Assembly: GCF_902459465.1 (NCBI RefSeq)
Contig: NC_047081.1
Location: 4,712,001-4,776,000 of the forward strand
Direction: 5' to 3'
DNA length: 64,000 bases
From: Asterias rubens
Taxonomy: Eukaryota
Numbering within the stretch: the first letter of the stretch is position 1; the number at the start of each line of letters is the position of its first letter. This document shows, piece after piece, positions 6,771 through 61,735 of the stretch. Below the pieces are notes generated by a model, which was not told the DNA's origin, did not search any database, and saw only the letters and a program-made list of their open reading frames with translations. The translations under genes and the position numbers were made by a program.

Positions 6771-7865
6771 TGGCGCTTACTCGAAACCCAAGTCAGGGAA
6801 ATGAAAAATTAGTCTAGCCTCAAGAAATCTCAGCCGCCAATTAGACGTAACTTTAGAGGAAATTGTTCTTCAAATTCGGCTGATTTAAGTAATTATTCCC
6901 GAGAGATGGCGAGATGGATAGAGAGTTCATCTTGGGGACCCGTACCCCGAGAGACCTCGATATTACTGCCCTTTCACGAATATTAGTATGGCTATTTTTT
7001 GATAGTATGAGATCGGTTTAGATTTTTATTTTGCTACCGCGGTATCGCAGCTGATTCACAGTAGTAACGTGTTTATGAGTAGGCGGTACTTTCTCTACGG
7101 AAATAAGGCTCTCTGCATGGATTGTTTTGGATTTTGCGTCCAGGTGAAAAATATCACAAGCTAAGGTTCATTTTTCATAATTTTTTTTCTTTCTTCAAGA
7201 ATGTTTTTGGTTTACCTGCATCATATATTACTGAATTGTTTTTATGTTAGGGAGTTTATCCTTTATAATTGCATGTCATCTGTTTCGCAAATACTTGTCG
7301 TCGTAAGCAATTCTTGAGTTGTGTTAGGTTGCTGAGCGCAAGACAGTTTATAAAATCTGAAGATCTGAGTTTCAGATGGTACTCTGTGGTGCTCTCGCAC
7401 ATAGGGTCTCATTCCCGGTACCGTAACGTTCGACAATAGCAATAAAGGTTATTGTCAGTAGCTTCCCATCAGACAATCCATTCAGACAAAACATTTTGCT
7501 TCCAGACAATCCATTCAAATGGTTTTCTCTCAGACACTCAACTCTAAGAAGAATGTATTGGACTATTTCTGTGTCGTATTTTCCTTGCGTTATATTGTAC
7601 ATGAGGTTATATTGATTCAGTGGCAATTAATTCCGCTGCAATGACATCTCAGTGTGTTGTCATCGGTCAATCCATACTTTATATCGCCCTCATGTGATCA
7701 GAAAGTTCCAATCACGCAACTTCCATATATCAATTACACTCAACCGTCGATATGCATGTCTAAGTATTTATTTCATAATGCATATAGTTTTGATTATGTT
7801 TTATTGCGAAAAGTGCTTTACTTGCCAACAGAGAGTAGTATGCGGTCATTTTGCTTTAAAATTAT

Positions 7866-8262
7866 TTGGCTACCAGGTATTTGTTTAAAATAACTTGGTT
7901 ACCAGGTAGTTGTTTAAATTAACCTGGTTACCAGGTGGTTGTTTAAAATAGCTTGGTTACCAGGTAGTTTCTCAAAATAACTTGCTTACATAGTAGTTGT
8001 TTAAAAAAATCTGGCTACCAGGTAGTTGTTTAAAATAACTTGATTACCAGGTAGTTGTTTGAAATAACCTGGTTTCCAGGTAATTTTTTAAAATGACCTA
8101 GATTCCAGGTAAATAGAATGTTTAAAATAACTCAGTTACGTTGTGGTTAGTTTTAAATAAATTGGTAACCATGTAGTTAGTTTTAAATAATTTGGTAACC
8201 AGGTAGTTAGTTTAAAATAAATTGGTAACCATGAAGTTAGCTTTAAATAACTTGGTAACCTT
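7866..8262. repeat. Degenerate 29/30-bp minisatellite, about 14 units
   Basis: Consensus ttggttaccaggtagttgtttaaaataac. Unit starts 7866, 7895, 7924, 7953, 7982, 8011, 8040, 8069, 8098, a transitional unit at 8131, then 30-bp units at 8162, 8192, 8222, 8252. Confidence 0.9.
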
Positions 8263-19430: not shown

Positions 19431-19827
19431 ATAAAGGCAGTGCACACTATTGGTAATTACTCATAGTAATTATTAGCATAAAACCTTTCTCGATTACGAG
19501 TAATGGGGAGAGGTTAATAGTATAAAACATTGTGAGAAACGGCTCCCTCTGAAGTGACGTAGTTTTCAAGAAATAAGTAGTTTTCCACGAATTTGATTTC
19601 GAGACCTCAGAATATAGAATTTTAGGTCTCGAAATCAAGCATACGAAAGCACACAACTTCGTGTGACCATGGTGCGACAAGGGTGTTTTTCTTTCATTAT
19701 TATCTCGCAACTTCGACGACCGATTGAGTTCACATTTTCACAGGTTTGTTATTTTATGCATATGTTGAGATACACTAAGTGAGAAGACTGGTCTTTGACA
19801 ATTACCAATAGTGTCCTGTGTCTTTAA
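19431..19827 (-). mobile_element. Family A MITE
   Basis: AAAGGCAGTGCACACTATTGGTAATTACTC...AATTACCAATAGTGTCCTGTGTCTTTAA. Confidence 0.92.
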
Positions 19828-21607: not shown

Positions 21608-23580
21608 AATGTAGGGTGGGGAAGCCTATTGCACACATTCCCTCGATTAGGCCGGTGCTAACTTTTCTTTGTTTAATGTAGGTGAGGGGAAGCCTATTGC
21701 ACACATTCCCTCGATTAGGCCGGTGCTAACTTGTCTTTGTTTAATGTAGGTGTGGGGAAGCCTATTGCACACATTCCCTCGATTAGGCCGGTGCTAACTT
21801 GTCTTTGTTTAATGTAGGTGTGGGGAAGCGTTATGCACACATTCGCTCGATTAGGCCGGTGCTAACTTGTCTTTGTTTAATGTAGGTGTGGGGAAGCCTA
21901 TTGCCCAAATTCTCTCGATTAGGCCGGTGCTAACTTGTCTTTGTTTAATGTAGGTGTGGGGAAGCCTATTGCACACATTCCCTCGATTAGGCCGGTGCTA
22001 ACTTGTCTTTGTTTAATGTAGGTGTGGGGAAGCCTATTGCACACATTCCCTCGATTAGGCCGGTGCTAACTTGTCTTTGTTTAATGTAGGTGTGGGGAAG
22101 CCTATTGCACACATTCGCTCGATTAGGCCGGTGCTAACTTGTCTTTGTTTAATGTAGGTGTGGGGAAGCCTATTGCACACATTCGCTCGATTATGCCGGT
22201 GCTAACTTGTCTTTGTTTAATGTAGGTGTGGGGAAGCCTATTGCACACATTCCCTCGATTAGGCCGGTGCTAACTTGTCTTTGTTTAATGTAGGTGTGGG
22301 GAAGCCTATTGCACACATTCCCTCGATTAGGCCGGTGCTAACTTGTCTTTGTTTAATGTAGGTGTGGGGAAGCCTATTGCACACATTCGCTCGATTAGGC
22401 CGGTGCTAACTTGTCTTTGTTTAATGTAGGTGTGGGGAAGCCTATTGCACACATTCCCTCGATTAGGCCGGTGCTAACTTGTCTTTGTTTAATGTAGGTG
22501 TGGGGAAGCCTATTGCACACATTCGCTCGATTAGGCCGGTGCTAACTTGTCTTTGTTTAATGTAGGTGTGGGGAAGCCTATTGCACACATTCGCTCGATT
22601 AGGCCGGTGCTAACTTGTCTTTGTTTAATGTAGGTGAGGGGAAGCCTATTGCACACATTCCCTCGATTAGGCCGGTGCTAACTTGTCTTTGTTTAATGTA
22701 GGTGTGGGGAAGCCTATTGCACACATTCCCTCGATTAGGCCGGTGCTAACTTGTCTTTGTTTAATGTAGGTGTGGGGAAGCCTATTGCACACATTCTCTC
22801 GATTAGGCCGGTGCTAACTTGTCTTTGTTTAATGTAGGTGTGGGGAAGCCTATTGCACACATTCGCTCGATTAGGCCGGTGCTAACTTGTCTTTGTTTAA
22901 TGTAGGTGTGGGGAAGCCTATTGCACACATTCCCTCGATTAGGCCGGTGCTAACTTGTCTTTGTTTAATGTAGGTGTGGGGAAGCCTATTGCACACATTC
23001 GCTCGATTAGGCCGGTGCTAACTTGTCTTTGGTTAATGTAGGTGTGGGGAAGCCTATTGCACACATTCCCTCGATTAGGCCGGTGCTAACTTGTCTTTGT
23101 TTAATGTAGGTGAGGGGAAGCCTATTGCACACATTCCCTCGATTAGGCCGGTGCTAACTTGTCTTTGTTTAATGTAGGTGTGGGGAAGCCTATTGCACAC
23201 ATTCCCTCGATTAGGCCAGTGCTAACTTGTCTTTGTTTAATGTAGGTGTGGGGAAGCCTATTGCACACATTCGCTCGATTAGGCCGGTGCTAACTTGTCA
23301 TTGTTTAATGTAGGTGTGGGGAAGCCTATTGCACACATTCCCTCGATTAGGCCGGTGCTAACTTGTCTTTGTTTAATGTAGGTGTGGGGAAGCCTATTGC
23401 ACACATTCGCTCGATTAGGCCGGTGCTAACTTGTCTTTGTTTAATGTAGGTGTGGGGAAGCCTATTGCACACATTCCCTCGATTAGGTCGGTGCTAACTT
23501 GTCTTTGTTTAATGTAGGTGTGGGGAAGCCTATTGCACACATTCCCTCGATTAGGCCGGTGCTAACTTGTCTTTGTTTAA
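21608..23580. repeat. 68-bp minisatellite, 29 units
   Basis: aatgtaggtgtggggaagcctattgcacacattccctcgattaggccggtgctaacttgtctttgttt. First unit at 21608 (67 bp), then every 68 bp from 21675 to 23511. Confidence 0.98.
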
Positions 23581-27142: not shown

Positions 27143-27503
27143 TTAAAGACAGTGTACACTATTGGTAATTGTCAAAGAGCAGTCTTCTCACTTGGTGTAT
27201 CTCAACATATGCATAAAATAACAAACCTGTGAAAATTTGAGCTCGATTGGTCGTCGGAGTTGCGAGATAACTATGAAAGAAAAAACACCCTTGTCACACG
27301 AAGTTGTGTGCTTTCAGATGCTTGATTTCGAGACCTCAAGTTCTAAACTTGAGGTCTCGAAATCAAATTCGTGGAAAATAACTTCTTTCTCCAAAACTAG
27401 GTCACTTCAAAGGGAGCTGTTTCTCACAATGTTTTATACCATCAATCTCTCCCCATTACTCGTTTCCAAGTAAGGTTTTATGCCAATAACTATTTGAGTA
27501 ATT
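27143..27503 (+). mobile_element. Family A MITE, right TIR truncated
   Basis: TTAAAGACAGTGTACACTATTGGTAATTGTC start; central hairpin ttgatttcgagacctcaagt/acttgaggtctcgaaatcaa. Confidence 0.9.
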
Positions 27504-30500
27504 AACTCAAACTGCAGTATCTCTGAAATAGCTGAGGTAGCTTTGTAGACAGGGGAAGAGGGCTGATTCTGATTGCTTTAGTTACGAGACTCATTTGAGC
27601 AATGTCAAGTTCGTTTATTTTCATGCATAAGGTTTGCTAATTTGCATACATGAACTCCTCCCAAACAAAGTGAAATCACAAAGTGCACTATGATGATAAG
27701 GTTACTCAACACAACACTCAGCAGATGATGTACTTTTATGCTACCTGTCATCTGTCACTTTTCCTAAATCTTTCGGACTCTTTTGGCGGGCAATTGAAGT
27801 AGCTTTATATCCTGCCTCTATGAAAAACAACTGTATTGGATTTATTACACTCAATCACGACGAGCAACATACCTAAGATGGTTAAATCACAGTCACATAT
27901 GAGTTGGGATACCAGACCAGCGAATCACCCAAATACTAACACTTTTAAGCTGATTTAAGATCAAGGTGCCTGCGCGGTCGGAAATGTTTGGAAAACTCTA
28001 ATTTTTACAAGACAAGTTGTAATGATTTGGTTGGAGTGCAGAGTGTCTTGCGTGTCAGTGGAGATAATAAATCAGGGACTCAAAAGCTTACCTCATTAAA
28101 GAGATTTATGTGTAATTGATAAAAGGTTCGGAGTCCCTTGTGGTTTATTGTTGTGACATCTTTATATATAGTTATAAAGGTATACATAGTTGTTTACACG
28201 AATCAGTCCAGTTTAAAAAGAGCATCATCGCTTAAATTGAAATCACTAGTGACTTTTGGAAATTAAACTTGGTATCCCCTTTTTCACAAAATTTTGAAAT
28301 ATATTGACAACTCACTTAAGTGTCTATTGATGAAAATGACATGAATGTTTTTGGATATGACCTCCTTCTGCCCTGTGTAAAACATAGGTTGATGGTATTC
28401 CTGGTACCCTACCGCAGCCAGACACGGCCATAGCAACGCTTAGTATCTGTCCTCACTGTGTCTCCCCTATAATTCGATTTTCTGGACTAAAATTCGATTC
28501 CAGGGTCCTCCTACGGGACAGTGATTATGCTCAGAAACGTAATCAGGCGTAAATGATGGAATTATGGCTGCGGATATTTGTGAGATCTAGTTACCGCCGC
28601 TGGTAATTCCTGTCCGTATTCACTTGAACGAGCCTGGGTAACTAGCCAACATGGCGGAGACTACTCCACCAAACCTAGGCCATAGCCTAGGTTTGGTCAG
28701 CAAGATACTATTAAAAAAATACTACTTTTTTGCTGAGTCGTCATCGAATCACAATGGTTATTCGAATACTTTCTTATTGTTAGTTCCTAGTCTTCTTAAG
28801 TGCTCCGCAGGCTGTTCCTTCTTCGAACTTAAGCATGACGATAAGCTAATAAAAAATAGTCTACAATATTTGGTGGTGATTGGGCATTTTTTACCTGACT
28901 TTGAAATGGTTAATACATTCGCCGCTATAACAAGGTCACACGTGGCTTCATAATTAACTACCACTTGTGAATGTACACCCAGCTATCCTGTGCCAAACCC
29001 TTCACCTGAGCAATACCTGTGTGTTTTCCTTGATATGTTTTCTGGCGTTAGCAGCAAGCTCATATAAATCATTCAGTCTTCACACTAGTTTCACTTCATG
29101 TTTTTGACATACATGATATCTGGATGGATTAGTAATGTCCTGTTTGTGAAACTTAGATTTCCCGAAGTCGTGACCTTAAACTTTGCACTTTTGTGCCTCT
29201 TCAAAGACCTGCTTCCAAGAGGCCGAGGGACTGACTGTACAGACTGGAACAATAATTAATGAGTAAGGATAATTTTGGATGTTGTAAATGTTCTTATGCA
29301 GGAAGCATGATGGATATTGTGTCATTCATCACTCATACAAATGTTCCAACTATCATAAACTTCCAAGGAAGTCTAAAGTACACGCGCGTGTGTGTTAATT
29401 AATAACAAAAAAGGTCCATGACTTAAAATTGCCTCCCTTGGAATTTCTCAGTGTAGACTGTATTTGTTTATTTTGTTGTTCATTTTTGCGTTTCTACCTC
29501 CATGGTTAGATGTATGGATTGTCTATAGGAATGTTCTTTGCTTCATGCGGGTACTTTCATGCATGTATGCATCGTATGTAAACACATTATAATTTCAGCG
29601 GGGGCAGCTGTCTCCCCATTTCAACTGGAGAAATTTCATTAAGTCCCCATTAGTCCCGGTGAGAGACCGAGGCAGGGAGGGTTTGACGGGGCGGTTGCAC
29701 GCTCGGCCTGACCGTCTCTCGCGGCTATGTCCCTGCTCAGACGCGCCTTGGTGGCATGCCTGCCTGTCGCTCTACGTGCACGCTCATGTTGATACTACAC
29801 TTTTTCCTCCTCCAGCGTCAAAACCCATCGGCTACGGTGACAGAACACCCAGACTCTCTTAAGTTTAAAAGCGCACCATTAATTAATGACTGTCGATTGA
29901 TGAGCACTTCCTCTCAACTCCCATATCTCATTTTTTTTTTTTTTTTTTGATAAAGATTATTATTTATATACTTTTTGTTTGTGTTTTTTTGTTTAGGACT
30001 ATCGAGTGGCCAATGAATTTCTCACGTCATTCTTGCCACGTCCCTTGGCGGTCTTACTCAGTGTGTTGCTGAGTATATACCTTTCCACACGCACAAAGTC
30101 TACCAACATCTATTTCGTTAGATATAGCGTATCTAAAAGCAGTTTGATCACCAGGCTATTGGAGGATAATATATGACACATTTGGACTTGCGGGGGCATT
30201 GTAGTTTATAAGAAGCAACCTCATCACAGCGAGATATTACCTCTGGAACTACCGCACATTCTCTGTTGCCTTCTAGCGGTAAGCTATTTTGTTCAGATGC
30301 TATTGTAAAATAACCAAAACCTGGATGCAAAACTGTTCCTCTTTGAGTATGAGATTTCTGTTAATATGGCCATGAAGGAAAAAGACATGTTCAAGTTGGT
30401 TTTCTCGTTATCACTTTGCGATAGACCTACGTAGTGTATTCACAGTAATAGTCTGGTCATGATGTTATAGTTATATGCACTGTGAGAGTTGAGGAACTGT

Positions 30501-32343: not shown

Positions 32344-34165
32344 TTGGCACTCATGGAGCTCCGTACAATCAGCCAGCCCAAAGACATACATGATGGCACT
32401 CATGGTGCTCCGTACTCTCAGCCAGCCCAAAGGCACACATAATGGCACTCATGGAGCTCCGTACAATCAGCCAGCCCAAAGACACACATAATGGCACTCA
32501 TGGAGTTCTGTACTTTTAGCCAGCCAAAAGTCTCACATAATGGCACTCATGGAGCTCCGTACAATCAGCCAGCCAAAATACACACATAATGGCACTCATG
32601 CACTCCGTACAACCAGCCAGCCCGAATACACACATAATGACACTCAATGAGCTCCGTACAACCAGCCAGCCCAAAGACACACATATGGCACTCGTGGAAC
32701 TCCGTACTATCAGCAAGCCCAAAGACATGGCACTCATGGAGCCCCGTACTATCAGCCAGCCCAAAGACACCGGAATGGCACTCTTGGAACTCCGTACTAT
32801 CAGCAAGCCAAAGACACACATAATGGCACTCGTGGAACTCCGTACTATCAGCAATCCCAAAGACACACATAATGACACCAATGGAGCTACGTACAGTCAG
32901 CCAGCCAAAGACACACATAATGGCACTCAAGGAGCTCCGTACTATCAGCAAGCCCAAAGACACACATATGGCACTCGTGGAACTCCGTACTATCAGCCAG
33001 CCAAAATACACACATAATGGCACTCATGCAGCTCCGTACAACTAGCCAGCCCGAATACACATAATGGCACTCAATGAGCTCCGTACAACCAGCCAGCCCA
33101 AAGACACACATATGGCACTCGTGGAACTCCGTACTATCAGCAAGCCCAAAGACATGGCACTCATGGAGCTCCGTACTATCAGCCAGCCAAAAGAAACCGG
33201 AATGGCACTCGTGGAACTCCGTACTGTCAGCAAGCCAAAGACACACATATGACACTCGTGGAACTCCGTACTGTCAGCAATCCCAAAGACACACATAATG
33301 ACACCAATGGAGCTCCGTACAGTCAGCCAGCCAAAGACACACATAATGGCACTCAAGGAGCTCCGTACTATTAGCAAGCCCAAAGACACACATATGGCAC
33401 TCGTGGAACTCCGTACATTCAGCCAGCCAAAATACACACATAATGGCACTCATGCAGCTCCGTATCAGCCAGCCAAAGACACACATAATGACACTCATGG
33501 AGCTCCGTACTATCAGCCAGCCCAAAGACACCGGAATGGCACTCGTGAAACTCCGTACTATCAGCAAGCCAAATACACACATATGGCACTCGTGGAACTC
33601 CGTACTATCAGCAAGCCCAAAGACACACTTAATGACACTCGTGGAACTCCGCACTATCAGCCAGCCAAAGACACACATAATGGCACTCATTGAGCTCCGT
33701 ACAATCAGCCAGCCCAAAGACACCGGAATGGCACTCGTGAAACTCCGTACTATCAGCAGCCCAAAGACACACATATGGCACTCGTGGAACTCCGTACTAT
33801 CAGCAATCCCAAAGACACACATAATGACACCAATGAAGCTCAGTACAGTCAGCAGCCAAGGACACACATAATGGCACTCAAGGAGCTCCGTACTACCAGC
33901 CAGCCCAAAGACACACATAATGACACTCGTGGAACTCCGCACTATCAGCCAGCCAAAGACACACCTAATGGCACTCACTGAGCTCCGTACAATCAGCCAG
34001 CCCAAAGACACACATAATGACACCAATGAAGCTCAGTACAGTCAGCAGCCAAAGACACACATAATGGCACTCAAGGAGCTCCGTACTATCAGCAAGCCCA
34101 AAGACACACATAATGGCACTTGTAGAACTCCGTACTATCGGGCAACCAGAAGACACACTAAAAGA
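32344..34165. repeat. Complex minisatellite of 42-49-bp monomers (about 38) with higher-order structure
   Basis: Consensus atggcactcatggagctccgtactatcagccagcccaaagacacacata. A 9-monomer block recurs at 32589, 33017 and 33443 (spacings 428 and 426). Confidence 0.95.
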
Positions 34166-34764: not shown

Positions 34765-35138
34765 TTAAAGGGATACGTTGCTTTGGATTTGGGCGCTTCG
34801 AGCTTTACAAGTGAAATGAACAGTATATGTGGAAATATGTTTTAAAAGTAGAATATGTAATCCACCCAAATTAACCTAGAAAATATGTGGTTTTCCTTTT
34901 ACATCTTGACAAAACACAGTCCGCAATTTGTTGAAACAATTTGTTTAGTGTACACACATAATGGTAGACCGTATTGTTCACAGAATAAAAGGTAAACCGC
35001 GTAGGTTGGAGGGATTTATTTTGTAAATCATTATACTGTATACTTGTTAAACATGTTTTCAAACATATTCAATTCAAACAAACGCTTTTGATAGTCTAGC
35101 CCAAAGCGCCCAAATTTGAAGGCAATGTGTCCTTTTAA
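34765..35138. mobile_element. Family B MITE, old and diverged
   Basis: TTAAAGGGATACGTTGCTTTGGAT...AAGGCAATGTGTCCTTTTAA. Shares its right TTAA with the next family A copy. Confidence 0.8.
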
Positions 35139-35505
35139 AGGCAGTGGACACTATTGGTAATTGTCAAAGACTAGTCTTCTCACTTGGTGTATCTCAACAT
35201 ATGCATAAAATAACAAACCTGTGAAAATTTGAGCTCAATCGGTCGCCGAAGTTGCGAGATAATAATGAAAGAAAAAACACCCTCCGTCACACGAATTTGT
35301 GTGCTTTCTGATGCAAGTTTTAAACTTGAGGTCTTAAAATCAAATTCGTGGAAAATTACTGTTTTCTCGAAAACTACGTCACTTCAGAGGGAGCTGTTTC
35401 TCACAATGTTTTATACTGTCAACCTCTCCCTATTACTCGTAATCAAGAAAGGTTTTATGATGATAATTATTTTCAGTAATTACCAATAGTGTCCACTGCC
35501 TTTAA
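35135..35505 (+). mobile_element. Family A MITE with perfect TIRs
   Basis: TTAA|AGGCAGTGGACACTATTGGTAATT ... AATTACCAATAGTGTCCACTGCCT|TTAA. TTAA target with purine-purine ends is Kolobok-like by established superfamily rules. Confidence 0.95.
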
Positions 35506-37022: not shown

Positions 37023-38068
37023 ACCCGTATAAGACCAGTGATGTTTTGTTGTAGGAGATGCTTGGCCTATGTCTTACCCGTATAAGACCAGTGATGTTTT
37101 GTTGTAGGAGATGCTTGGCCTATGTCTTACCCGTATAAGACCAGTGATGTTTTGTTGTAGGAGATGCTTGGCCTATGTCTTACCTTGCTTTAAACCCGCA
37201 TAAGACCAGTGATGTTTTGTTGTAGGAAATGCTTGGCCTATGTCTTACCTTGCTTTAAACCCGTATAAGACCAGTGATGTTTTGTTGTAGGAGATGATTG
37301 CCCTATGTCTTACCTTGCTTTAAACCCGTATAAGACCAGTGATGTTTTGTTGTAGGAGATGCTTGGCCTATGTCTTACCCGTATAAGACCAGTGATGTTT
37401 TGTTGTAGGAGATGCTTGGCCTATGTTTTACCTTGCTTTAAACCCGTATAAGACCAGTGATGTTTTGTTGTAGGAGATGCTTGGCCTATGTCTTACCTTG
37501 CTTTAAACCCGTATAAGACCAGTGATGTTTTGTTGTAGGAGATGCTTGGCCTATGTCTTACCTTGCTTTAAACCCGTATAAGACCAGTGATGTTTTGTTG
37601 TAGGAGATGCTTGGCCTATGTCTTACCCGTATAAGACCAGTGATGTTTTGTTGTAGGAGATGCTTGGCCTATGTCTTACCCGTATAAGACCAGTGATGTT
37701 TTGTTGTAGGAGATGCTTGGCCTATGTCTAACCCGTATAAGACCAGTGATGTTTTGTTGTAGGAGATGCTTGGCCTATGTCTTACCCGTATAAGACCAGT
37801 GATGTTTTGTTGTAGGAGATGCTTGGCCTATGTCTTACCCGTATAAGACCAGTGATGTTTTGTTGTAGGAGATGCTTGGCCTATGTCTTACCCGTATAAG
37901 ACCAGTGATGTTTTGTTGTAGGAGATGCTTGGCCTATGTCTTACCCGTATAAGACCAGTGATGTTTTGTTGTAGGAGATGCTTGGCCTATGTCTTACCTT
38001 GCTTTAAACCCGTATAAGACCAGTGATGTTTTGTTGTAGGAGATGCTTGGCCTATGTCTTACCTTGCT
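37023..38068. repeat. Dimorphic 53/65-bp minisatellite, 18 units
   Basis: acccgtataagaccagtgatgttttgttgtaggagatgcttggcctatgtctt with an optional 12-bp accttgctttaa addition. Confidence 0.97.
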
Positions 38069-38824: not shown

Positions 38825-40640
38825 TTAAAGACAGTGGACACTATTGGTAATTGTCAAAGACCAGTCTTCTAACTTGGTGTATATATCAACATATGCATAA
38901 AATAACAAACCTGTGAAAATTTGAGCTCGATTGGTCGTCGGAGTTGCGAGATAACTATGAAAGAAAAGAACACCCTTGTCACACGAAGTTGTGTGCTTTT
39001 AGATTTTTGATTTCGAGACCTCAAATTCTAAACTTGAGGTCTCGAAATCAAATTCGTGGAAAACTACTTCTTTCTCGAAAACTGTGTCACTTCAGAGGGA
39101 GCCTTTTCTCACAATGTTTTATATTATCAACTTCTCCCCGGTGACTGCTCTATGTTCCGACACCCCTATGTTCCGACACCCCTATGTTCCGAAACCCCTA
39201 TGTTCCGACAACTCCTATGTTCCGACAACTCAACCTATAATCCGACACCCCTATGTTCCGACACCCCTATATTCCGACACCCCTATGTTCCGACACCCAT
39301 TTATTCCGACAACCAAAACACCCCTATGTTCCGACACCCATATGTTCCGACAACCTGCACCAACATTTTGTGTTAGCAATTTTTCAAGAAAAACGGTGCG
39401 AGTATAATTTATATGAAAAGTGTTATTCTGCAACTTTGGTTTAGTAAGAAGTGCTGAGTAAATGGGGGGGGGGGGGGGGGGTAGACTTGATTATTTGTTA
39501 TTATTAATTGTTAACGTATTATTATTACTTGTATTATTATAAATAAATAAAAAATTGGGGGGGGGGCAAATGAAAGAAATTACACATCGGCGCTAAAAAC
39601 GCAGGGGAGAGTTGTAATTTTTATAAATTATGAAGGCTCGCATCTAACAAAGGAAATTGTAAAGTACCGAGCATTTTCTTGTGGGCTTACTCGGGGAGCC
39701 ACAACTCATGTTTATAACCACAAAACAAAAGCACCAAATTCATGTGTGATTCAATTATCTTAATTTTGATTCAATCACTTTAAACAAACAATTAACAAAA
39801 TTCAACTGATGATTGTTCAAACTTATTACCGGCCGAAATTCGCCGGGCAACATGTAATACAACTTGTGTTTGTGTTATTGGTCAACAGAGTAACAATGTG
39901 CGAATATAACTTGTCGGAACATAGGGGTGTCGGAACATAGGGGTGTCGGAATATAGGGGTGTCAGAACATAGGGGTGTCGGAATATAGGTTCAGTTGTCG
40001 GAACATAGGGGTGTCGGAATATAGGGGTGTCGGAATATAGGGGTGTCGGAACATAGGGATGTCGGAATATAGGCTGAGTTGTCGGAACATAGGGGTGTAG
40101 GAACATAGGGGTGTCGGAACATAGGGGTGTCGGAACATAGGGGTGTCGGAATATAGGGGTGTCGGAACATAGGGGTGTCGGAACATAGGGGTGTCGGAAC
40201 ATAGGGGTGTCGGAATATAGGGGTGTCGGAACATAGGGGTGTCGGAACATAGGGGTGTTGGAACATAGGGGTGTCGGAACATAGGGGTGTCGGAATATAG
40301 GCTGAGTTGTCGGAACATAGGGGTGTCGGAACATAGGGGTGTCGGAATATAGGGGTGTCGGAACATAGGGGTGTCGGAACATAGGGGTGTCGGAACATAG
40401 GGTTGTCGGAACATAGGGGTGTCGGAATATAGGCTGAGTTGTCGGAACATAGGGGTGTCGGAATATAGGGGTGTCGGAACATAGGGGTGTCGGAACATAG
40501 GGGTGTCGGAACATAGGGGTGTCGGAACATAGGGGTGTCAGAACATAGGGGTGTACCCTTTTCCCCATTACTTGTTACCAATTGAGGTTTGATGTCGATA
40601 ATTATTTTGAGTAATTACCAATAGTATCCACTGCCTTTAA
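38825..40640 (+). mobile_element. Family A MITE split by a nested insertion (pieces 38825-39139 and 40558-40640)
   Basis: Left piece ends ...tatcaacttctcccc. Right piece resumes cttttccccattacttg...aattaccaatagtatccactgcctTTAA. Confidence 0.92.
39140..40557. mobile_element. Foldback/TU-like element with inverted arms made of 15-bp tandem repeats
   Basis: Left arm (ctatgttccgacacc/c)n at 39149-39352; right arm is the reverse complement (gtcggaacatagggg/t)n at 39913-40553. Termini GGT...ACC. 9-bp TSD cttctcccc (39131-39139) / cttttcccc (40558-40566). Confidence 0.88.
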
Positions 40641-42497
40641 TATACACTGAAGGCAACATTTGACACATTTTATATCATTTTTATGTTTAAAAACATTTGT
40701 CAAGGTAACATTGTTTATTTAGTTAAAGGTACGCTTTGTGGAGAAAACTAAGGAAACAAACCAACTATAAGAGCAATATACTAAATTTTACCCTATTTAT
40801 ATTTTAAATTATTCAATAAAGGCTTGTTTTATTTGATTCGTTATTACCACATTTTATTTGGGCTTGAATTGTGAGCTCTGGTAGGTTCTGATGAATCTTC
40901 TCACGCCGTCCAGTTGACATTATTCTCCATTCGATAAATCTGAAAGTACACCTCTTTTCTGGCCACGTCTGAGACCATATCAATCACATGATGGACGTGG
41001 GAAGCCCACCACCGTGTTGTTTATATAGACACCATTCCCTTTTAAAAAGTGTTAACACAATAAACAATATTGCCTACACGGAACCGTTGAATATTCATAA
41101 ATGCTTAAGCGAATCTTAAAGGAATGGTTGCTCCTCTTACATTAACTGCCTATGGATGGGCGTGTTATCTTTTTAAGCCAACACGTGGTTCCGTTTTTAG
41201 TACTTTTATTTTTGTGTAAATATTTATATATTTATATATATTTAAAATACAACCAGGCAGTACCTATCAAAATGGATGACGTATCAAGTTTGACGATGTG
41301 TCAGAAAGTTGATGCTTGACTGTGACACAGCAGTGCAAAGTGTGGTTGTGTTGGCCCTTTAATGTGATTAATGACGTGATTTGTCTTTGACGCAGACGAA
41401 GCTGGGTATCTGATACCACGCTGGAAAAGTGTGTTTTTATAAATGTACAGAGTGATAATAATATCTGATAGCGATTTAGCGCTGTTACAATTCTCATCAT
41501 ACTTATTGCACTCATCGTTGGATTGTTGGACCAAGGTTGCACCAAGTTTGAAACAAGCAAAACATATCCCTACAAGTATATCTCTTATCGTGGAATGCAA
41601 TGCAATGGCTGGGGGAATAGATGATCACAACTCTCTTTGTAAAAAAAAATATATATGTAGTTTGTTATGAAAGGCTTTCTTGTGTCCTTTAGGATATATT
41701 GGATGCATCATTAACAATCTCAGATGCTCAACATTAAACAAAGATCTGACTGTGTTTGTCTTCAGGTATAGGTTTACAATAATCAGGGAGTAGGGGAAAT
41801 AATCGAAAAGAATTGGAGAAAACAAGATTGATGTGACTCGAGGAAAGGTCGTGAACATTAGAGAGGTGGGCGTCTAGCCTATACAGTTATATTTATAGGC
41901 CTTTAATACAATTAATTTTTTTAATGTTACATTAACGCATACAATACAAGCTCACACATTAACCTTTCAGCAGAATCGATTCGATTTCCAATCCTGATCT
42001 GTATCAACATAAAAGACGTGTATTTCGCTGGTTCTCATCTATGTCAATGATTCTATTACTTAGTCACGTCTCAGTCAGTATGACGTCACATACGGCCTTC
42101 AGTGGATGCATGCATTATGTTTAAGACAAGAACAACAAGATATATTCAATACATGACGTACTTTCCAGAGTTCAGTCGATATAAATAAATACATTTATAA
42201 ATATATTTCACTTACGGTTTTAATTGATAAGGTTTTAAGAGCTTAAATAATAGGCCAGCTTATTGCACCCTATAGTTTAGCGGTATTCTTTCAATAAGCT
42301 TGGGTGTTTAGGTTCTTAAGGCCTTATAAACAAGTTCACCATCAGGGAGATTTGTTCTAATTTCTTAAAACTCTGAGTTTATAGCCTACTAGAAGTTGTT
42401 AATGTGTGTTCATATGTAATACATACAGTAATTTAGGTTTACCGTACTTTGTTTGTTACGTGTCGGACGATAAGTTAAAATTTTAATTTTGGTTAAC

Positions 42498-44650: not shown

Positions 44651-45027
44651 GGCACTATTGGTAATTGTCAAAGACCAGTCTTCTCACTTTGTGTATCTCA
44701 ACCTATGCATGAAATAACAAACCTGTGAACATTTGAACTCAATTGGTCGTCGAAGTTGCGAGATAATAATGAAAGAAAAAAACGCCCTTGTCACGCGAAG
44801 TTGTGTGCATTTAGATGCTTGATTTCGATACCTCAAATTCCAAATCTGAGGTCTCGAAATCAAATTTGTGGAAATCTACTTCTTGCTGGAAAACTATACT
44901 TCACTTCAGAGGGAGCCGTTTCTCACAATGTTTTACACTATCAACCTCTCCCCATTACACGTAATCAAGAAAGGTTTTATGATAATAATTATTTTGAGTA
45001 ATTACCAATAGTGTCCACTGCCTTTAA
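44651..45027 (+). mobile_element. Family A MITE
   Basis: ggcactattggtaattgtcaaagaccag...aattaccaatagtgtccactgcctTTAA. Confidence 0.92.
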
Positions 45028-57247: not shown

Positions 57248-57609
57248 TTAAGAGCCAACCACCCCTTTGTCCTAAAGAAAACAACAACTTGAAGTAATGT
57301 TGGTCTTCTCATCAACTGTTCAGTTTCATCCTCTACTTCCCCATCTTTTGTATGTTCTTGTTGTCGTTTGTAGTCGTTTTCGTTCATTATCTCTGTGCTA
57401 TCGATATTCCCCATGTTAATTTGTGTGGGTTTTACTTCGTTCTCATTACTTGCTGTTGCCGTCGTTCTTGTTCTTATACTCCCAGTCTTATTCTTGCCTA
57501 TTACTGCGTAACAGGTTAGCACGATCGGTGTGCAAATACGAACATTATAACAATGTGATCTCTTATTACATCAATGGTTCATTAATTGAACGTGTTTTTT
57601 TTTCTACAG

Positions 57610-58982
57610 GTGACGATCAATTGAGTGAACAGCGCCCTCGCCGACATCCAAACGCAAAGGTTGGTACTGTGGTGAAGACCTACACTGGGTATGACGTCAG
57701 CACATACGTCACCTACAACTCTCCAGCTGGAATTTACACCCTGGAGATCCACAGTTTAGAGAAGAGCACGAGTGTGCAAATCTATGCCACCACGACCCCG
57801 GATTCAGACCACTTGTACCCAGAGTTGCCCACCGACCCACGGCTTGACATCACTTCATTTAGGAAGAATAAGGTGTCATTAGCTTGGAAACCAAGCCCCT
57901 CTGACGTGATCTATCGAGAGCCCATCGTGTATTGTGTTGCACTCAATCCAAGGCGTAATTACCATACATGGTGCAGTGTGCAATCATGTTTGTATGGGGA
58001 TGCTCCTCCAGCTCGTCCTCCCAATACAGGATTTGGCTTCGAGAACGAGAAAACCAAGAGAGATGAATATCGCCGAGATCGTAAACGAGATAAAGGAGGT
58101 CGGGATAGAGACAATGGGGAGGAAGATGATATCATTGTGGAATGTGTAGGAAAGAAGACACTGCACACATTCACCAACTTGGAACCGGCTCAGCGCTATT
58201 ACTTTGACCTTTTCGCGGTAGACGAGACCAATAACAGGAGTATTGCTTATACAGGGACCTCCATCATTACAAGACCAGGGCCAGCCACAAGAAAGTACAT
58301 TGCCCTCAAGGATGGTAACCTACGGACATCGTCAGTTCGTCGGTCGTCTCCTGTTAAAACATTCAACTTTAGTGTCGGTGAGACGGTCAAGGACGTCCTG
58401 GTCACCGTCCAACCCTGCACTGAATCCATCACGGCTGAGTTGTGGCGAGATGGAACCAAAATAAGAAGTTCTAACATCCGAGATCTGAAAGATTTCCGCG
58501 TACGTGAAGTAACGGGCGACATACAGGTCAAAGTGAAGAGTTTGCGCAGAGGGTCTACGCACTTCAGAATCTTCGCCACGACGAGACCAAACAAATACCC
58601 GTTTCCCCAATTGCCTGTTGACAAACGGATAAAAGTCTTTGAAAATCTGCGACAGTGTGATTCCATCACTCTGGCTTGGCTTAGCACGAAAGAGGTATCG
58701 CAGTACTGCCTGTACAAACGCGAAGATAGGCAGAAGAAGCGATCTAAGAAGAGTAATCGTGAGGGAAATACGCAGTGCCACGAACCAGACATGAGAAAGA
58801 GAACTGAAAAGGTGATTTGCCGACCTGTTAGTGGACCTGATACAGAGAGGGATGTACTCACGGAAACGGTTACCGGGCTAACACCGGGTACCACGTACGT
58901 CTTCGATGTTTATGTCAGCAGTTTTGGAAAGCAAACGCTGGCCTATAGGAGTGCCAGGGTTACAACGAAGAAGGTATGCTGA
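57610..58982 (+). CDS. NDNF: NDNF-like, coding exon 3 (FN3-like regions and C-terminal NDNF domain, ends KKVC-stop)
   Basis: Acceptor tttttttctacag|g at 57609 (phase 1), TGA at 58980-58982. Motifs YATTTPDSDHLYPELPTDPR, LAWKPSP, YYFDLF, FPQLPVDKRIKVFENLRQCDSITLAWL and a terminal Cys match NDNF. Spliced CDS is 242+119+1373=1734 nt, i.e. 577 aa plus stop. Confidence 0.96.
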
Positions 58983-61310: not shown

Positions 61311-61735
61311 GGTGCCAACCGCGAGCCAGTTAACCTCAATCCAGCTTACCGCGAACCAGCTAATATCAAACCAGCTAACCGCGAACCAGCTGATATCAAA
61401 CCAGCTAATCTCAAACCAGCTAACCGCGAACCAGCTAATCTCAAACCAGCTAACCGCGAACCAGCTAATCTCAAACCAGCTAACCGCGAACCATCTAATC
61501 TCAAACCAGCTAACCGCGAACCATCTAATCTCAAACCAGCTAACCGCGAACCAGCTAATATCAAACCAGCTAACCGCGAACCAGCTAATCACAAACCAGC
61601 TAACCGCGAACCAGCTAATATCAAACCAGCTAACCGCGAACCAGCTAATATCAAACCAGCTAACCGCGAACCAGCTAATGTCAAACCAGCTAACCGCGGA
61701 CCAGCTTACTGTGAACCAACACCGCGAACTAGCAA
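61311..61735. repeat. 30-bp (2 x 15-bp) tandem array, about 13 units
   Basis: aaaccagctaaccgc-gaaccagctaat(c/a)tc; both halves share aaccagctaa. Confidence 0.95.

What the first reader, a model, noticed from the sequence alone, without database searches (positions are those of the whole stretch)
39131..40566. Foldback/TU-like transposon with 15-bp-repeat arms nested inside a MITE, with a 9-bp TSD
Seen: what looks like two separate minisatellites is one 1,418-bp element. The 15-mer array on the left (~200 bp) is the reverse complement of the array on the right (~640 bp). They enclose a ~560-bp AT-rich non-coding spacer with G-runs, and the ends are GGT...ACC. Removing it restores a continuous family A MITE, and the target 9-mer is duplicated (cttctcccc / cttttcccc). 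Periodic variant units (gaatataggctgagtt) recur in the right arm. Established: sea-urchin TU elements and Drosophila FB elements have long inverted arms built of short tandem repeats (15-bp outer-domain repeats in TU), and 9-bp TSDs typify FB and Mutator-like elements. Inference: a non-autonomous member of such a family, possibly undescribed in this lineage, younger than the host MITE.
Basis: partly seen in the sequence, partly recalled or inferred. Interest (0 to 1): 0.7.

Follow-up and report, generated by a model that had tools for sequence, protein, structure and literature searches.

The report
Gene-less foldback transposon inside a MITE
This is a real copy of a hairpin-shaped, gene-less "jumping gene" that landed inside an older small transposon in a starfish-type genome. 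It belongs to a family of at least about 200 copies and is an ordinary new member of a known kind of element, whose driving enzyme I could not find.

Summary
Window 39140-40557/8 is one 1,418-1,419-bp insertion. It has a left arm of 12 tandem units (+ strand), a conserved 556-bp non-coding spacer, and a right arm of 39 units of the same repeat on the other strand.

There are two corrections. The unit is 16 bp (CTATGTTCCGACACCC), not 15. The target duplication can be read as 9 bp (8/9 match) or as 8 bp (7/8 match).

Seventeen uninterrupted copies of the host MITE carry the target once, so the empty site is shown.

It is a dispersed family:
- At least 203 left ends (GGTGACTGCT plus array) and about 135 right ends (GGTTACACAC or GGTNACACCC plus array); reversed-pattern controls gave 0.
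- The spacer recurs in about 50 copies at 69-93% identity.
- Paired copies range from 119 bp to 4.1 kb.
- Target duplications are 8, 9 or 10 bp in 13 copies.

No copy in hand encodes a protein. None of the genome's MULE, Merlin or Ulp1 hits lies between listed family ends.

The best reading is a non-autonomous foldback-type cut-and-paste transposon. It is most likely of the Mutator/Foldback superfamily (about 50%). The closest published analogues are nematode Tm1 and sea-urchin TU. It is a new member of a known kind and is moderately old: the spacer is 3.5% from its consensus.

The parts
38825..39130 (+). Left part of the host MITE. Its terminal inverted repeat lies at about 38825-38852, and an internal palindrome at about 39004-39054.
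   Evidence: BLAST to 14+ other copies in the window and loci. Ends compared. The genome search found 6,774 first-look candidates.
39131..39139 (.). Target-site duplication, left copy: cttctcccc. The 8-bp alternative reading is 39132-39139.
   Evidence: The intact MITE consensus has cctctcccc once.
39140..39149 (+). Left terminus GGTGACTGCT.
   Evidence: The same 10-mer plus array occurs at 203 or more genome sites; the reversed-pattern control gave 0. It is shared by all oriented copies.
39150..39355 (+). Left arm: 12 tandem units of about 16 bp (CTATGTTCCGACACCC and variants, including one 20-bp and one 25-bp unit).
39356..39911 (+). Non-coding, AT-rich spacer of 556 bp. It has G-runs at 39464-39481 and 39557-39566 and the palindrome CCGGCCGAAATTCGCCGG at 39829-39846.
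   Evidence: Conserved in about 50 genome copies at 69-93% identity. The alignment shows both G-runs and the palindrome conserved. No Rfam hit lies inside it.
39912..40548 (-). Right arm: 39 units of the same repeat on the opposite strand. The 20-bp variant units are spaced 132, 228 and 84 bp apart.
40549..40558 (-). Right terminus. Read from the end it is GGGTACACCC, a diverged form of the family's GGTTACACAC / GGTNACACCC. Base 40558 belongs either to the terminus or to the duplication.
   Evidence: The window's own end is listed as C21:4752536-4752558.
40558..40566 (.). Target-site duplication, right copy: cttttcccc. The 8-bp alternative reading is 40559-40566.
40567..40641 (+). Right part of the host MITE, including its right terminal inverted repeat (about 40613-40641).

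Best explanation
Window 39140-40557/8 is one copy of a non-autonomous, foldback-type, cut-and-paste DNA transposon family of a starfish-type genome. It inserted into an older MITE.

Shown:
- The family has fixed but unequal 10-nt termini, GGTGACTGCT on the left and GGTTACACAC on the right as read from that end. Both share GGTNAC.
- Each terminus is followed by an array of a 16-bp unit, so the two arms are inverted repeats of variable and unequal length.
- The arms enclose a conserved spacer of about 556 bp with no coding capacity.
- Insertion duplicates 8-10 bp of target.

Inferred mechanism:
- A transposase supplied in trans binds the reiterated 16-bp subterminal units and the GGTNAC ends. 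It excises the element and makes cuts staggered by 8-10 bp in the target.
- Array length then drifts by slippage or unequal exchange. Right arms range from a few units to about 2.4 kb.
- Hairpin-prone arms favour internal deletions, which give ends-only mini copies of 119-340 bp.

On the 8-10-bp duplications and the close structural match to Tm1, FB and Tetris, the transposase is most likely of the Mutator/Foldback (Phantom-like MULE) superfamily. I put that sub-claim at about 50%. The autonomous partner was not found. The copy is not recent: its spacer is 3.5% from the family consensus and its duplication has one mismatch.
For: Structure of the copy.

Family and copy number:
- 93 BLAST matches to the left arm, many covering 1-280.
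- 203 left ends and 113 right ends with up to 2 mismatches, controls 0.
- About 20 further variant right ends.
- 52 matches to the spacer.

Consistent termini and flanks in 15+ loci.

Target duplications with fixed termini:
- 8/8 in L003, L016, L023, L027, L032 and L034.
- 9/9 in L006; 8/9 in L005, L012 and L014; 6/9 in L015.
- 9/10 in L042.
- 7/8 or 8/9 in the window copy.

Empty site: 17 intact host-MITE copies.

No coding capacity: no ORF of 100 aa or more outside the arrays, and no Pfam hit, in the 2.8-, 4.1- and 6.1-kb copies. The long copies are explained by array expansion or nested insertions.

Relative age: spacer 96.5% to its 7-copy consensus, against 93.3% for the host MITE copy to a 14-copy consensus.

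Literature:
- Tm1 has asymmetric 7-bp end motifs, 13-15-bp tandem units in unequal numbers, 8-10-bp (mostly 9) duplications and a Phantom-type MULE transposase (PMC3169594).
- Tetris has 8-10-bp duplications and was assigned to Mutator on that basis. Most foldback elements are placed in Mutator (PMC4079207).
- Phantom has 8-10-bp duplications and Rehavkus 9 bp, both with minisatellites (PMC6446971).
Against: - No autonomous copy was found.
- The only four MULE-domain hits in the genome do not lie between any listed family ends. This includes a 1046-aa MULE+Ulp1 open frame at C5:16413168-16415153.
- The lists of ends are truncated at 100 rows per search, so left ends with 2 mismatches, and those with 1 mismatch beyond contig 16, were not seen.
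- Duplication length alone does not fix a superfamily, and foldback architecture has arisen in several superfamilies (PMC4079207, PMC3169594).
- Eight of about 27 sampled left ends have no right end within about 9 kb, and left ends outnumber right ends by about 1.5 to 1. Simple cut-and-paste does not predict this.
Confidence: 0.85

Rival explanations
1. It is the same kind of non-autonomous foldback element, but mobilised by a non-Mutator transposase that makes 8-10-bp duplications. Candidates are AcademH (9-10 bp), Merlin (8-9 bp), hAT or P (8 bp), or an undescribed enzyme.
For: No MULE partner was found. Foldback architecture is polyphyletic: Galileo belongs to the P superfamily. Earlier notes of this scan report AcademH and IS3EU foldback-like families in this genome. 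Merlin is present with about 8 near-identical copies carrying 312-aa open frames.
Against: - None of the 16 Merlin hits lies within a few kb of any listed family end. The exact-match lists of ends are complete.
- Clear 9-bp and 10-bp duplications (L006, L005, L012, L014, L042) argue against hAT and P, which make 8 bp or fewer.
- Clear 8-bp duplications (L003, L023, L032) argue against AcademH, which by my recollection makes 9-10 bp.
- The AcademH-like elements noted in this genome are described with TAG...CTA termini, not GGT...ACC (an unchecked lead).
- IS3EU makes 6-bp duplications with TA..TA termini (PMC10045372).
Confidence: 0.3
2. It is not a mobile element. It is a local inverted duplication of a minisatellite that happens to lie in a MITE.
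For: The window is rich in unrelated minisatellites. The two arms differ three-fold in length.
Against: More than 200 dispersed sites on nearly all large contigs share the same termini and spacer. Thirteen copies have 8-10-bp flanking duplications in different target sequences. The host MITE gives an exact empty site.
Confidence: 0.01
3. It is a direct relative of the sea-urchin TU elements by sequence, that is, an echinoderm-wide TU lineage and not an independent foldback family.
For: The host is an echinoderm-type genome (scan notes). The modular plan is the same: outer tandem-repeat domain, non-repeat middle, ends-only mini forms, 8-bp-class duplications. The TU features are recalled from Liebermann et al. 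1983 and Hoffman-Liebermann et al. 1985, which I could not read here.
Against: The unit is 16 bp, not 15. No TU sequence was available for comparison. Short subterminal repeats turn over fast, so a shared plan does not show common descent.
Confidence: 0.15

Closest known systems
Tm1 (Mutator/Foldback family of root-knot nematodes; Gross & Williamson 2011, PMC3169594)
   Same: Both have unequal short terminal motifs at the two ends, followed by arrays of a 13-16-bp tandem unit. The unit numbers are variable and unequal in the two arms. Both have a non-coding middle, MITE-like short derivatives, and 8-10-bp target duplications without a target consensus.
   Different: There is no sequence similarity of unit or termini: Tm1 has CGATTCAGTATCCGC with CGGTTAA / CCTACCC. 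Tm1 has an identified Phantom-type MULE transposase copy; none was found here. This family has a conserved 556-bp spacer with poly-G runs, whereas Tm1 has a histone-hairpin motif.
Sea-urchin TU elements (Liebermann et al. 1983; Hoffman-Liebermann et al. 1985). Features are from memory and from the citation in PMC4079207.
   Same: Both come from echinoderm hosts. Both have long inverted arms whose outer domain is a short tandem repeat, a modular structure with a middle segment, and 8-bp-class duplications. This family also has ends-only short copies; ends-only mini forms of TU are only my recollection and were not checked.
   Different: The unit is 16 bp here against 15 bp reported for TU. Sequence relatedness was not testable. 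I know of no superfamily assignment for TU.
Drosophila FB and Tetris foldback elements (PMC4079207)
   Same: Both show the foldback architecture and variable arm length through tandem repeats. Both have 8-10-bp (Tetris) or 9-bp (FB) duplications and mostly gene-less copies, with the autonomous partner hard to find.
   Different: The repeat units are much shorter here: 16 bp against about 220 bp in Tetris and 10/20/31 bp in FB. The copy number is higher than the 3 complete Tetris copies. No satellite-scale arrays were seen; the largest arm is about 2.4 kb.
Phantom and Rehavkus MULE groups (PMC6446971)
   Same: Both have 8-10-bp or 9-bp duplications and long TIRs (18-613 bp), with minisatellites associated with the element ends.
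   Different: Those groups are defined by their transposases (FLYWCH/SWIM or PHD plus a MULE DDE domain). No transposase is linked to this family.

Membership tests
Foldback-type elements (structural class: FB, TU, Tetris, Tm1) | Long inverted arms built of short tandem repeats, of variable and often unequal length | tested here: met
   16-bp unit, with 12 units against 39 in the window copy. Other copies have 2 to more than 100 units per arm.
Foldback-type elements (structural class: FB, TU, Tetris, Tm1) | Dispersed multi-copy family with defined ends and target-site duplications | tested here: met
   203 left and about 135 right ends, controls 0. Duplications in 13 copies. Empty site shown.
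Foldback-type elements (structural class: FB, TU, Tetris, Tm1) | The strand can fold back on itself | tested here: met
   The DNA fold pairs the whole left arm with the right arm, MFE -295.5 kcal/mol. No shuffles are given at this length.
Mutator superfamily (MULE / Foldback / Phantom) | Target duplication of about 9 bp (8-10/11) | tested here: met
   8 bp in three copies (L003, L023, L032), 8 or 9 bp in four more (L016, L027, L034, window), 9 bp in five and 10 bp in one.
Mutator superfamily (MULE / Foldback / Phantom) | An autonomous copy with the same termini encodes a MULE-type DDE transposase | tested here: inconclusive
   No ORF or Pfam hit in the 2.8-6.1-kb copies. Of the 4 PF10551 hits in the genome, none lies between listed ends. 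The lists of ends are truncated, and no more genome DNA could be fetched.
Sea-urchin TU elements | 15-bp outer-domain repeat and TU terminal sequence | not testable with these tools
   The unit here is 16 bp. The TU sequences and primary papers are not held.
Merlin superfamily | An IS1595/IS1016-type DDE transposase between the same termini; 8-9-bp duplication | tested here: not met
   16 PF12762 hits, about 8 with 312-aa open frames. None lies within a few kb of any exact or 1-mismatch family end. The 10-bp duplication in L042 is also outside the range.
hAT / P superfamilies | Fixed 8-bp duplication (7-8 bp in P) | tested here: not met
   In-register 9-bp duplications in L006 (9/9), L005, L012 and L014 (8/9), and 10 bp in L042. 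The transposase families themselves were not searched.
AcademH | 9-10-bp duplication; helicase-encoding autonomous copies | tested here: inconclusive
   8-bp duplications in L003, L023 and L032 do not fit. The termini differ from the TAG...CTA reported for AcademH-like elements of this genome in an unchecked scan note. The primary paper is not held.

The most novel reading that the evidence does not exclude
The family could be the asteroid counterpart of the sea-urchin TU elements. To my knowledge their transposase superfamily has never been assigned. With more than 200 copies and defined asymmetric ends, it would then offer a route to the TU-type transposase.

The 1.5-fold excess of left ends and the frequent solo left ends could reflect hairpin-driven breakage or one-ended events, not ordinary decay.
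Probability: 0.12. Interest if true: 0.5.

Novelty: new member of a known kind. Interest (0 to 1): 0.3.

Why it matters
It adds a well-defined foldback family, with termini, unit, spacer, duplication length and size spectrum, to an echinoderm genome.

In other animals such elements are known to seed satellites and to cause inversions and deletions. The family's hairpin-prone arrays of up to 2.4 kb and its solo ends make it a plausible source of local rearrangement and of assembly trouble.

By itself it does not change what is known about transposons. Its value would rise if its transposase were found, since that could also place the classical TU elements in a superfamily.

Tried and rejected
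1. Autonomous copy. I fetched 10 kb inward of ten left ends without a nearby partner, plus the three longest pairs.
   - The interiors share only other repeats.
   - Their ORFs gave no transposase. One is a reverse transcriptase of a nested retroelement (L033), and the others are low-complexity.
   - The 6.1-kb pair (L041) and the 2.9-kb pair (L043) have no duplication.
2. Transposase searches by coordinates. MULE PF10551, Merlin PF12762 and Ulp1 PF02902 gave no hit between listed ends.
I did not try to get round it. So the MULE+Ulp1 locus on C5 and the unlisted ends could not be inspected.
5. TU comparison. The 1985 TU paper was not held, and a search on its author and on 'TU elements' found nothing relevant. 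The Phantom and AcademH primary papers were not held either.
6. Rfam scan of the element: nothing inside it. The only hits are sub-threshold miRNA-like matches on the host MITE's palindrome.
7. The bacterial-type promoter/terminator scan is uninformative for a eukaryote.
Full-text searches found no description of foldback families in starfish.

Full report

Tandem Repeats Finder gives two arrays with the same unit on opposite strands, 39150-39352 (12.8 copies) and 39912-40554 (39.2 copies). Both have period 16, not 15.

The 16-mer CTATGTTCCGACACCC has 49 matches with up to 2 mismatches in the 64-kb window. Eleven lie on the + strand in the left array and 38 on the - strand in the right array. 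None lies elsewhere, and chance would give 0.01.

The arms are 88-94% complementary over 69-104 nt. As single-stranded DNA the whole left arm pairs with the right arm.

Between the arms lies a 556-bp spacer with GC 0.32-0.34. It holds an 18-G run and a 10-G run.

Unit by unit, the arms mix a G-type unit (CTATGTTCC...) and an A-type unit (CTATATTCC...). A 20-bp variant (CTATGTTCCGACAACTCAGC) recurs four times in the right arm, 132, 228 and 84 bp apart, and once in the left arm. It recurs but is not strictly periodic.

**Insertion into a MITE.**
- The flanks belong to a very abundant MITE: 6,774 first-look candidates in the genome, with many copies in the window itself.
- Seventeen uninterrupted copies read ...atcaaCCTCTCCCCattact... 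with the target once.
- In the window the left junction is ...caaCTTCTCCCC|GGTGACTGCT and the right junction is ...GTGTACC|CTTTTCCCCattact.
- Both copies of the duplicated stretch share a derived T not seen in the MITE consensus.
- If the right terminus is aligned without a gap to the family's 10-mer, the element ends at 40558. The duplication is then 8 bp with 7/8 identical.

**A family, not a one-off.** The assembly is 417.6 Mb in 150 contigs, and the window is C21:4712001-4776000.
- The left arm plus 65 bp of spacer finds 93 matches, several over the full 280 bp at 91-97% identity.
- The spacer finds 52 matches at 69-93%.
- The left terminus plus first unit (GGTGACTGCTCTATRTTCCGACA, up to 2 mismatches) occurs 203 times.
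- The right terminus (GGTTACACACCTATRTTCCGACA) occurs 113 times.
- The reversed-pattern controls gave 0 for both.
- A variant right terminus (GGTNACACCC...) adds about 20 more, including the window's own.

In 30 fetched loci the arrays are mostly paired in convergent orientation. All share the same unequal termini: GGTGACTGCT at one end, GGTTACACAC (read from the end) at the other, with GGTNAC in common.

From the coordinate lists I could pair about 35 elements of 119 bp to 4.1 kb. They include a class of ends-only copies of 119-340 bp.
- Long copies are explained by array expansion: right arms of 1.9 kb in L042 and about 2.4 kb in L043.
- Others are explained by nested insertions, as in L032 and L034. 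In L033 a retroelement carrying an RVT_1 ORF has inserted into a solo left end.

**Target duplications.** With termini fixed as 10-mers:
- 8/8 in L003, L016, L023, L027, L032 and L034.
- 9/9 in L006; 8/9 in L005, L012 and L014; 6/9 in L015.
- 9/10 in L042.
- L016, L027, L034 and the window copy could be either 8 or 9.
- The targets show no common sequence.
- L041 (6.1 kb) and L043 have none. Each may be two elements or a rearranged copy.

**Spacer and age.**
- The spacer alignment of nine copies shows both G-runs and the palindrome CCGGCCGAAATTCGCCGG conserved, even in a subfamily only 72-80% identical.
- The window's spacer is 95% identical to its three closest relatives and 96.5% to a 7-copy consensus. 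Fourteen of 15 consensus CpGs are kept.
- The host MITE copy is 93.3% identical to a rough 14-copy consensus.
- The nested element is therefore younger than its host, as nesting requires, but it is not recent.

**Coding capacity and the missing transposase.**
- No copy in hand has an ORF of 100 aa or more outside the arrays. The ORFs tested gave no Pfam hit.
- Interiors of left ends without partners share only other repeats.
- Genome searches gave four MULE-domain hits, sixteen Merlin-type hits and six Ulp1 hits.
- One 1046-aa open frame at C5:16413168-16415153 carries both MULE and Ulp1 domains.
- None of these places lies between listed family ends.
- The lists are complete for exact matches, but they are cut at 100 rows.
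- No further genome DNA could be fetched. So the absence of a partner is not established.

**What it is and how it likely works.**
- Shown: a non-autonomous, dispersed, foldback-type DNA transposon with asymmetric termini, reiterated 16-bp subterminal units and 8-10-bp duplications.
- Inferred: a trans-acting transposase recognises the reiterated units and the GGTNAC ends and makes cuts staggered by 8-10 bp.
- Inferred: arrays expand and shrink by slippage or unequal exchange, and hairpin formation favours internal deletion to ends-only forms.

**Comparison with known families.** The closest published structural analogue I could read is Tm1 of Meloidogyne. It has asymmetric 7-bp end motifs, 13-15-bp tandem units in unequal numbers, 8-10-bp (mostly 9) duplications and MITE-like derivatives. 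It also has a Phantom-type MULE transposase (PMC3169594).

Tetris shows 8-10-bp duplications and was placed in Mutator on that ground. Its authors note that most foldback elements fall in Mutator, though not all do (PMC4079207). Phantom (8-10 bp) and Rehavkus (9 bp) MULE groups carry minisatellites (PMC6446971).

Hence Mutator/Foldback is the leading assignment, at about 50%.
- Merlin is disfavoured, because its near-identical copies are nowhere near family ends.
- hAT and P are disfavoured by the 9- and 10-bp duplications.
- IS3EU is disfavoured by its 6-bp duplications and TA..TA termini (PMC10045372).
- AcademH is disfavoured by the 8-bp cases and, on an unchecked scan note, by different termini.
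- The relation to sea-urchin TU elements is one of plan only. Unit length differs (16 against 15, the latter from memory), and sequences could not be compared.

**Context from earlier notes of this scan.** These are leads and were not tested here. The genome is described as starfish-type. It is said to hold several other foldback-like families: a Mutator-type one whose transposase is fused to USP and Ulp1 proteases, an IS3EU-type one with 6-bp duplications, and AcademH-type ends-only palindromes. The MULE+Ulp1 open frame that I located on C5 agrees with the first of these.

**Verdict.** The superfamily is still open. This is a new member of a known kind, of modest interest.

Noticed in passing
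genome-wide; L031, L033, L036-L040: Left ends (at least 203) outnumber right ends (about 135) by about 1.5 to 1. Eight of about 27 sampled left ends have no right end within about 9 kb. One (L033) is split by a retroelement; the others break at different points of the spacer.
   Followed up: partly
G000 C11:9780982-9781100, C6:2672485-2672620, C3:2257364-2257513, C17:8338616-8338766, C6:17920722-17920878, C5:14531006-14531177, C4:11277262-11277446 and C4:11280127-11280311: Ends-only mini copies of 119-185 bp (left and right termini with a few units, no spacer). The two on C4 are 2.9 kb apart and identical in size, so probably a local duplication.
   Followed up: no
G000 C17:7.33-7.47 Mb, C6:16.71-16.99 Mb, C20:6.25-6.89 Mb, C18:13.17-13.42 Mb, C4:8.808-8.825 Mb: Copies of the family cluster within tens to hundreds of kb, although the mean spacing expected for about 200 copies is about 2 Mb. 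This could be local hopping or segmental duplication. It was not quantified.
   Followed up: no
G000 C5:16413168-16415153 (- strand): One 1046-aa open frame carries both a MULE transposase domain (PF10551, 38 bits) and a Ulp1/C48 protease domain (PF02902, 51.5 bits). It could not be fetched.
   Followed up: partly
G000 C11:8033983, C18:8669560, C20:9435452, C3:13709491, C8:15784245, C29:55918, C13:7815259 and others: A Merlin-type (DDE_Tnp_IS1595) transposon family with about eight near-identical hits, each in a 312-aa open frame without stops. It looks young.
   Followed up: no
window 57423-58979 (+): A 519-aa open frame encodes a neuron-derived neurotrophic factor homologue (NDNF 2.1e-32, NDNF_C 5.7e-67), about 17 kb downstream of the element.
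   Followed up: partly
window 38825-39130 + 40567-40641, and copies at 27144-27504, 35136-35505, 44653-45027, 19432-19826 and others: The host MITE (about 390 bp) has TIR AAAGGCAGTGGACACTATTGGTAATT and an internal palindrome at 39004-39054 that draws sub-threshold miRNA-like Rfam hits. It is extremely abundant: 6,774 first-look candidates, and more than 12 copies in this window.
   Followed up: partly
window 21608-23580, 32345-34158, 37023-38063, 61317-61733, 7850-8260: Several unrelated minisatellites: 68 bp x 29 at 97% identity, 48 bp x 38, 53 bp x 18, 15/30 bp x 28/13, and 29/58 bp. The 53-bp array lies only about 760 bp upstream of the host MITE.
   Followed up: no
L033:1005-2261 (-): A 419-aa open frame with a reverse-transcriptase domain (RVT_1, 3.1e-24) sits about 200 bp beyond the point where spacer homology ends. 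A retroelement is nested in a copy of the foldback family.
   Followed up: partly
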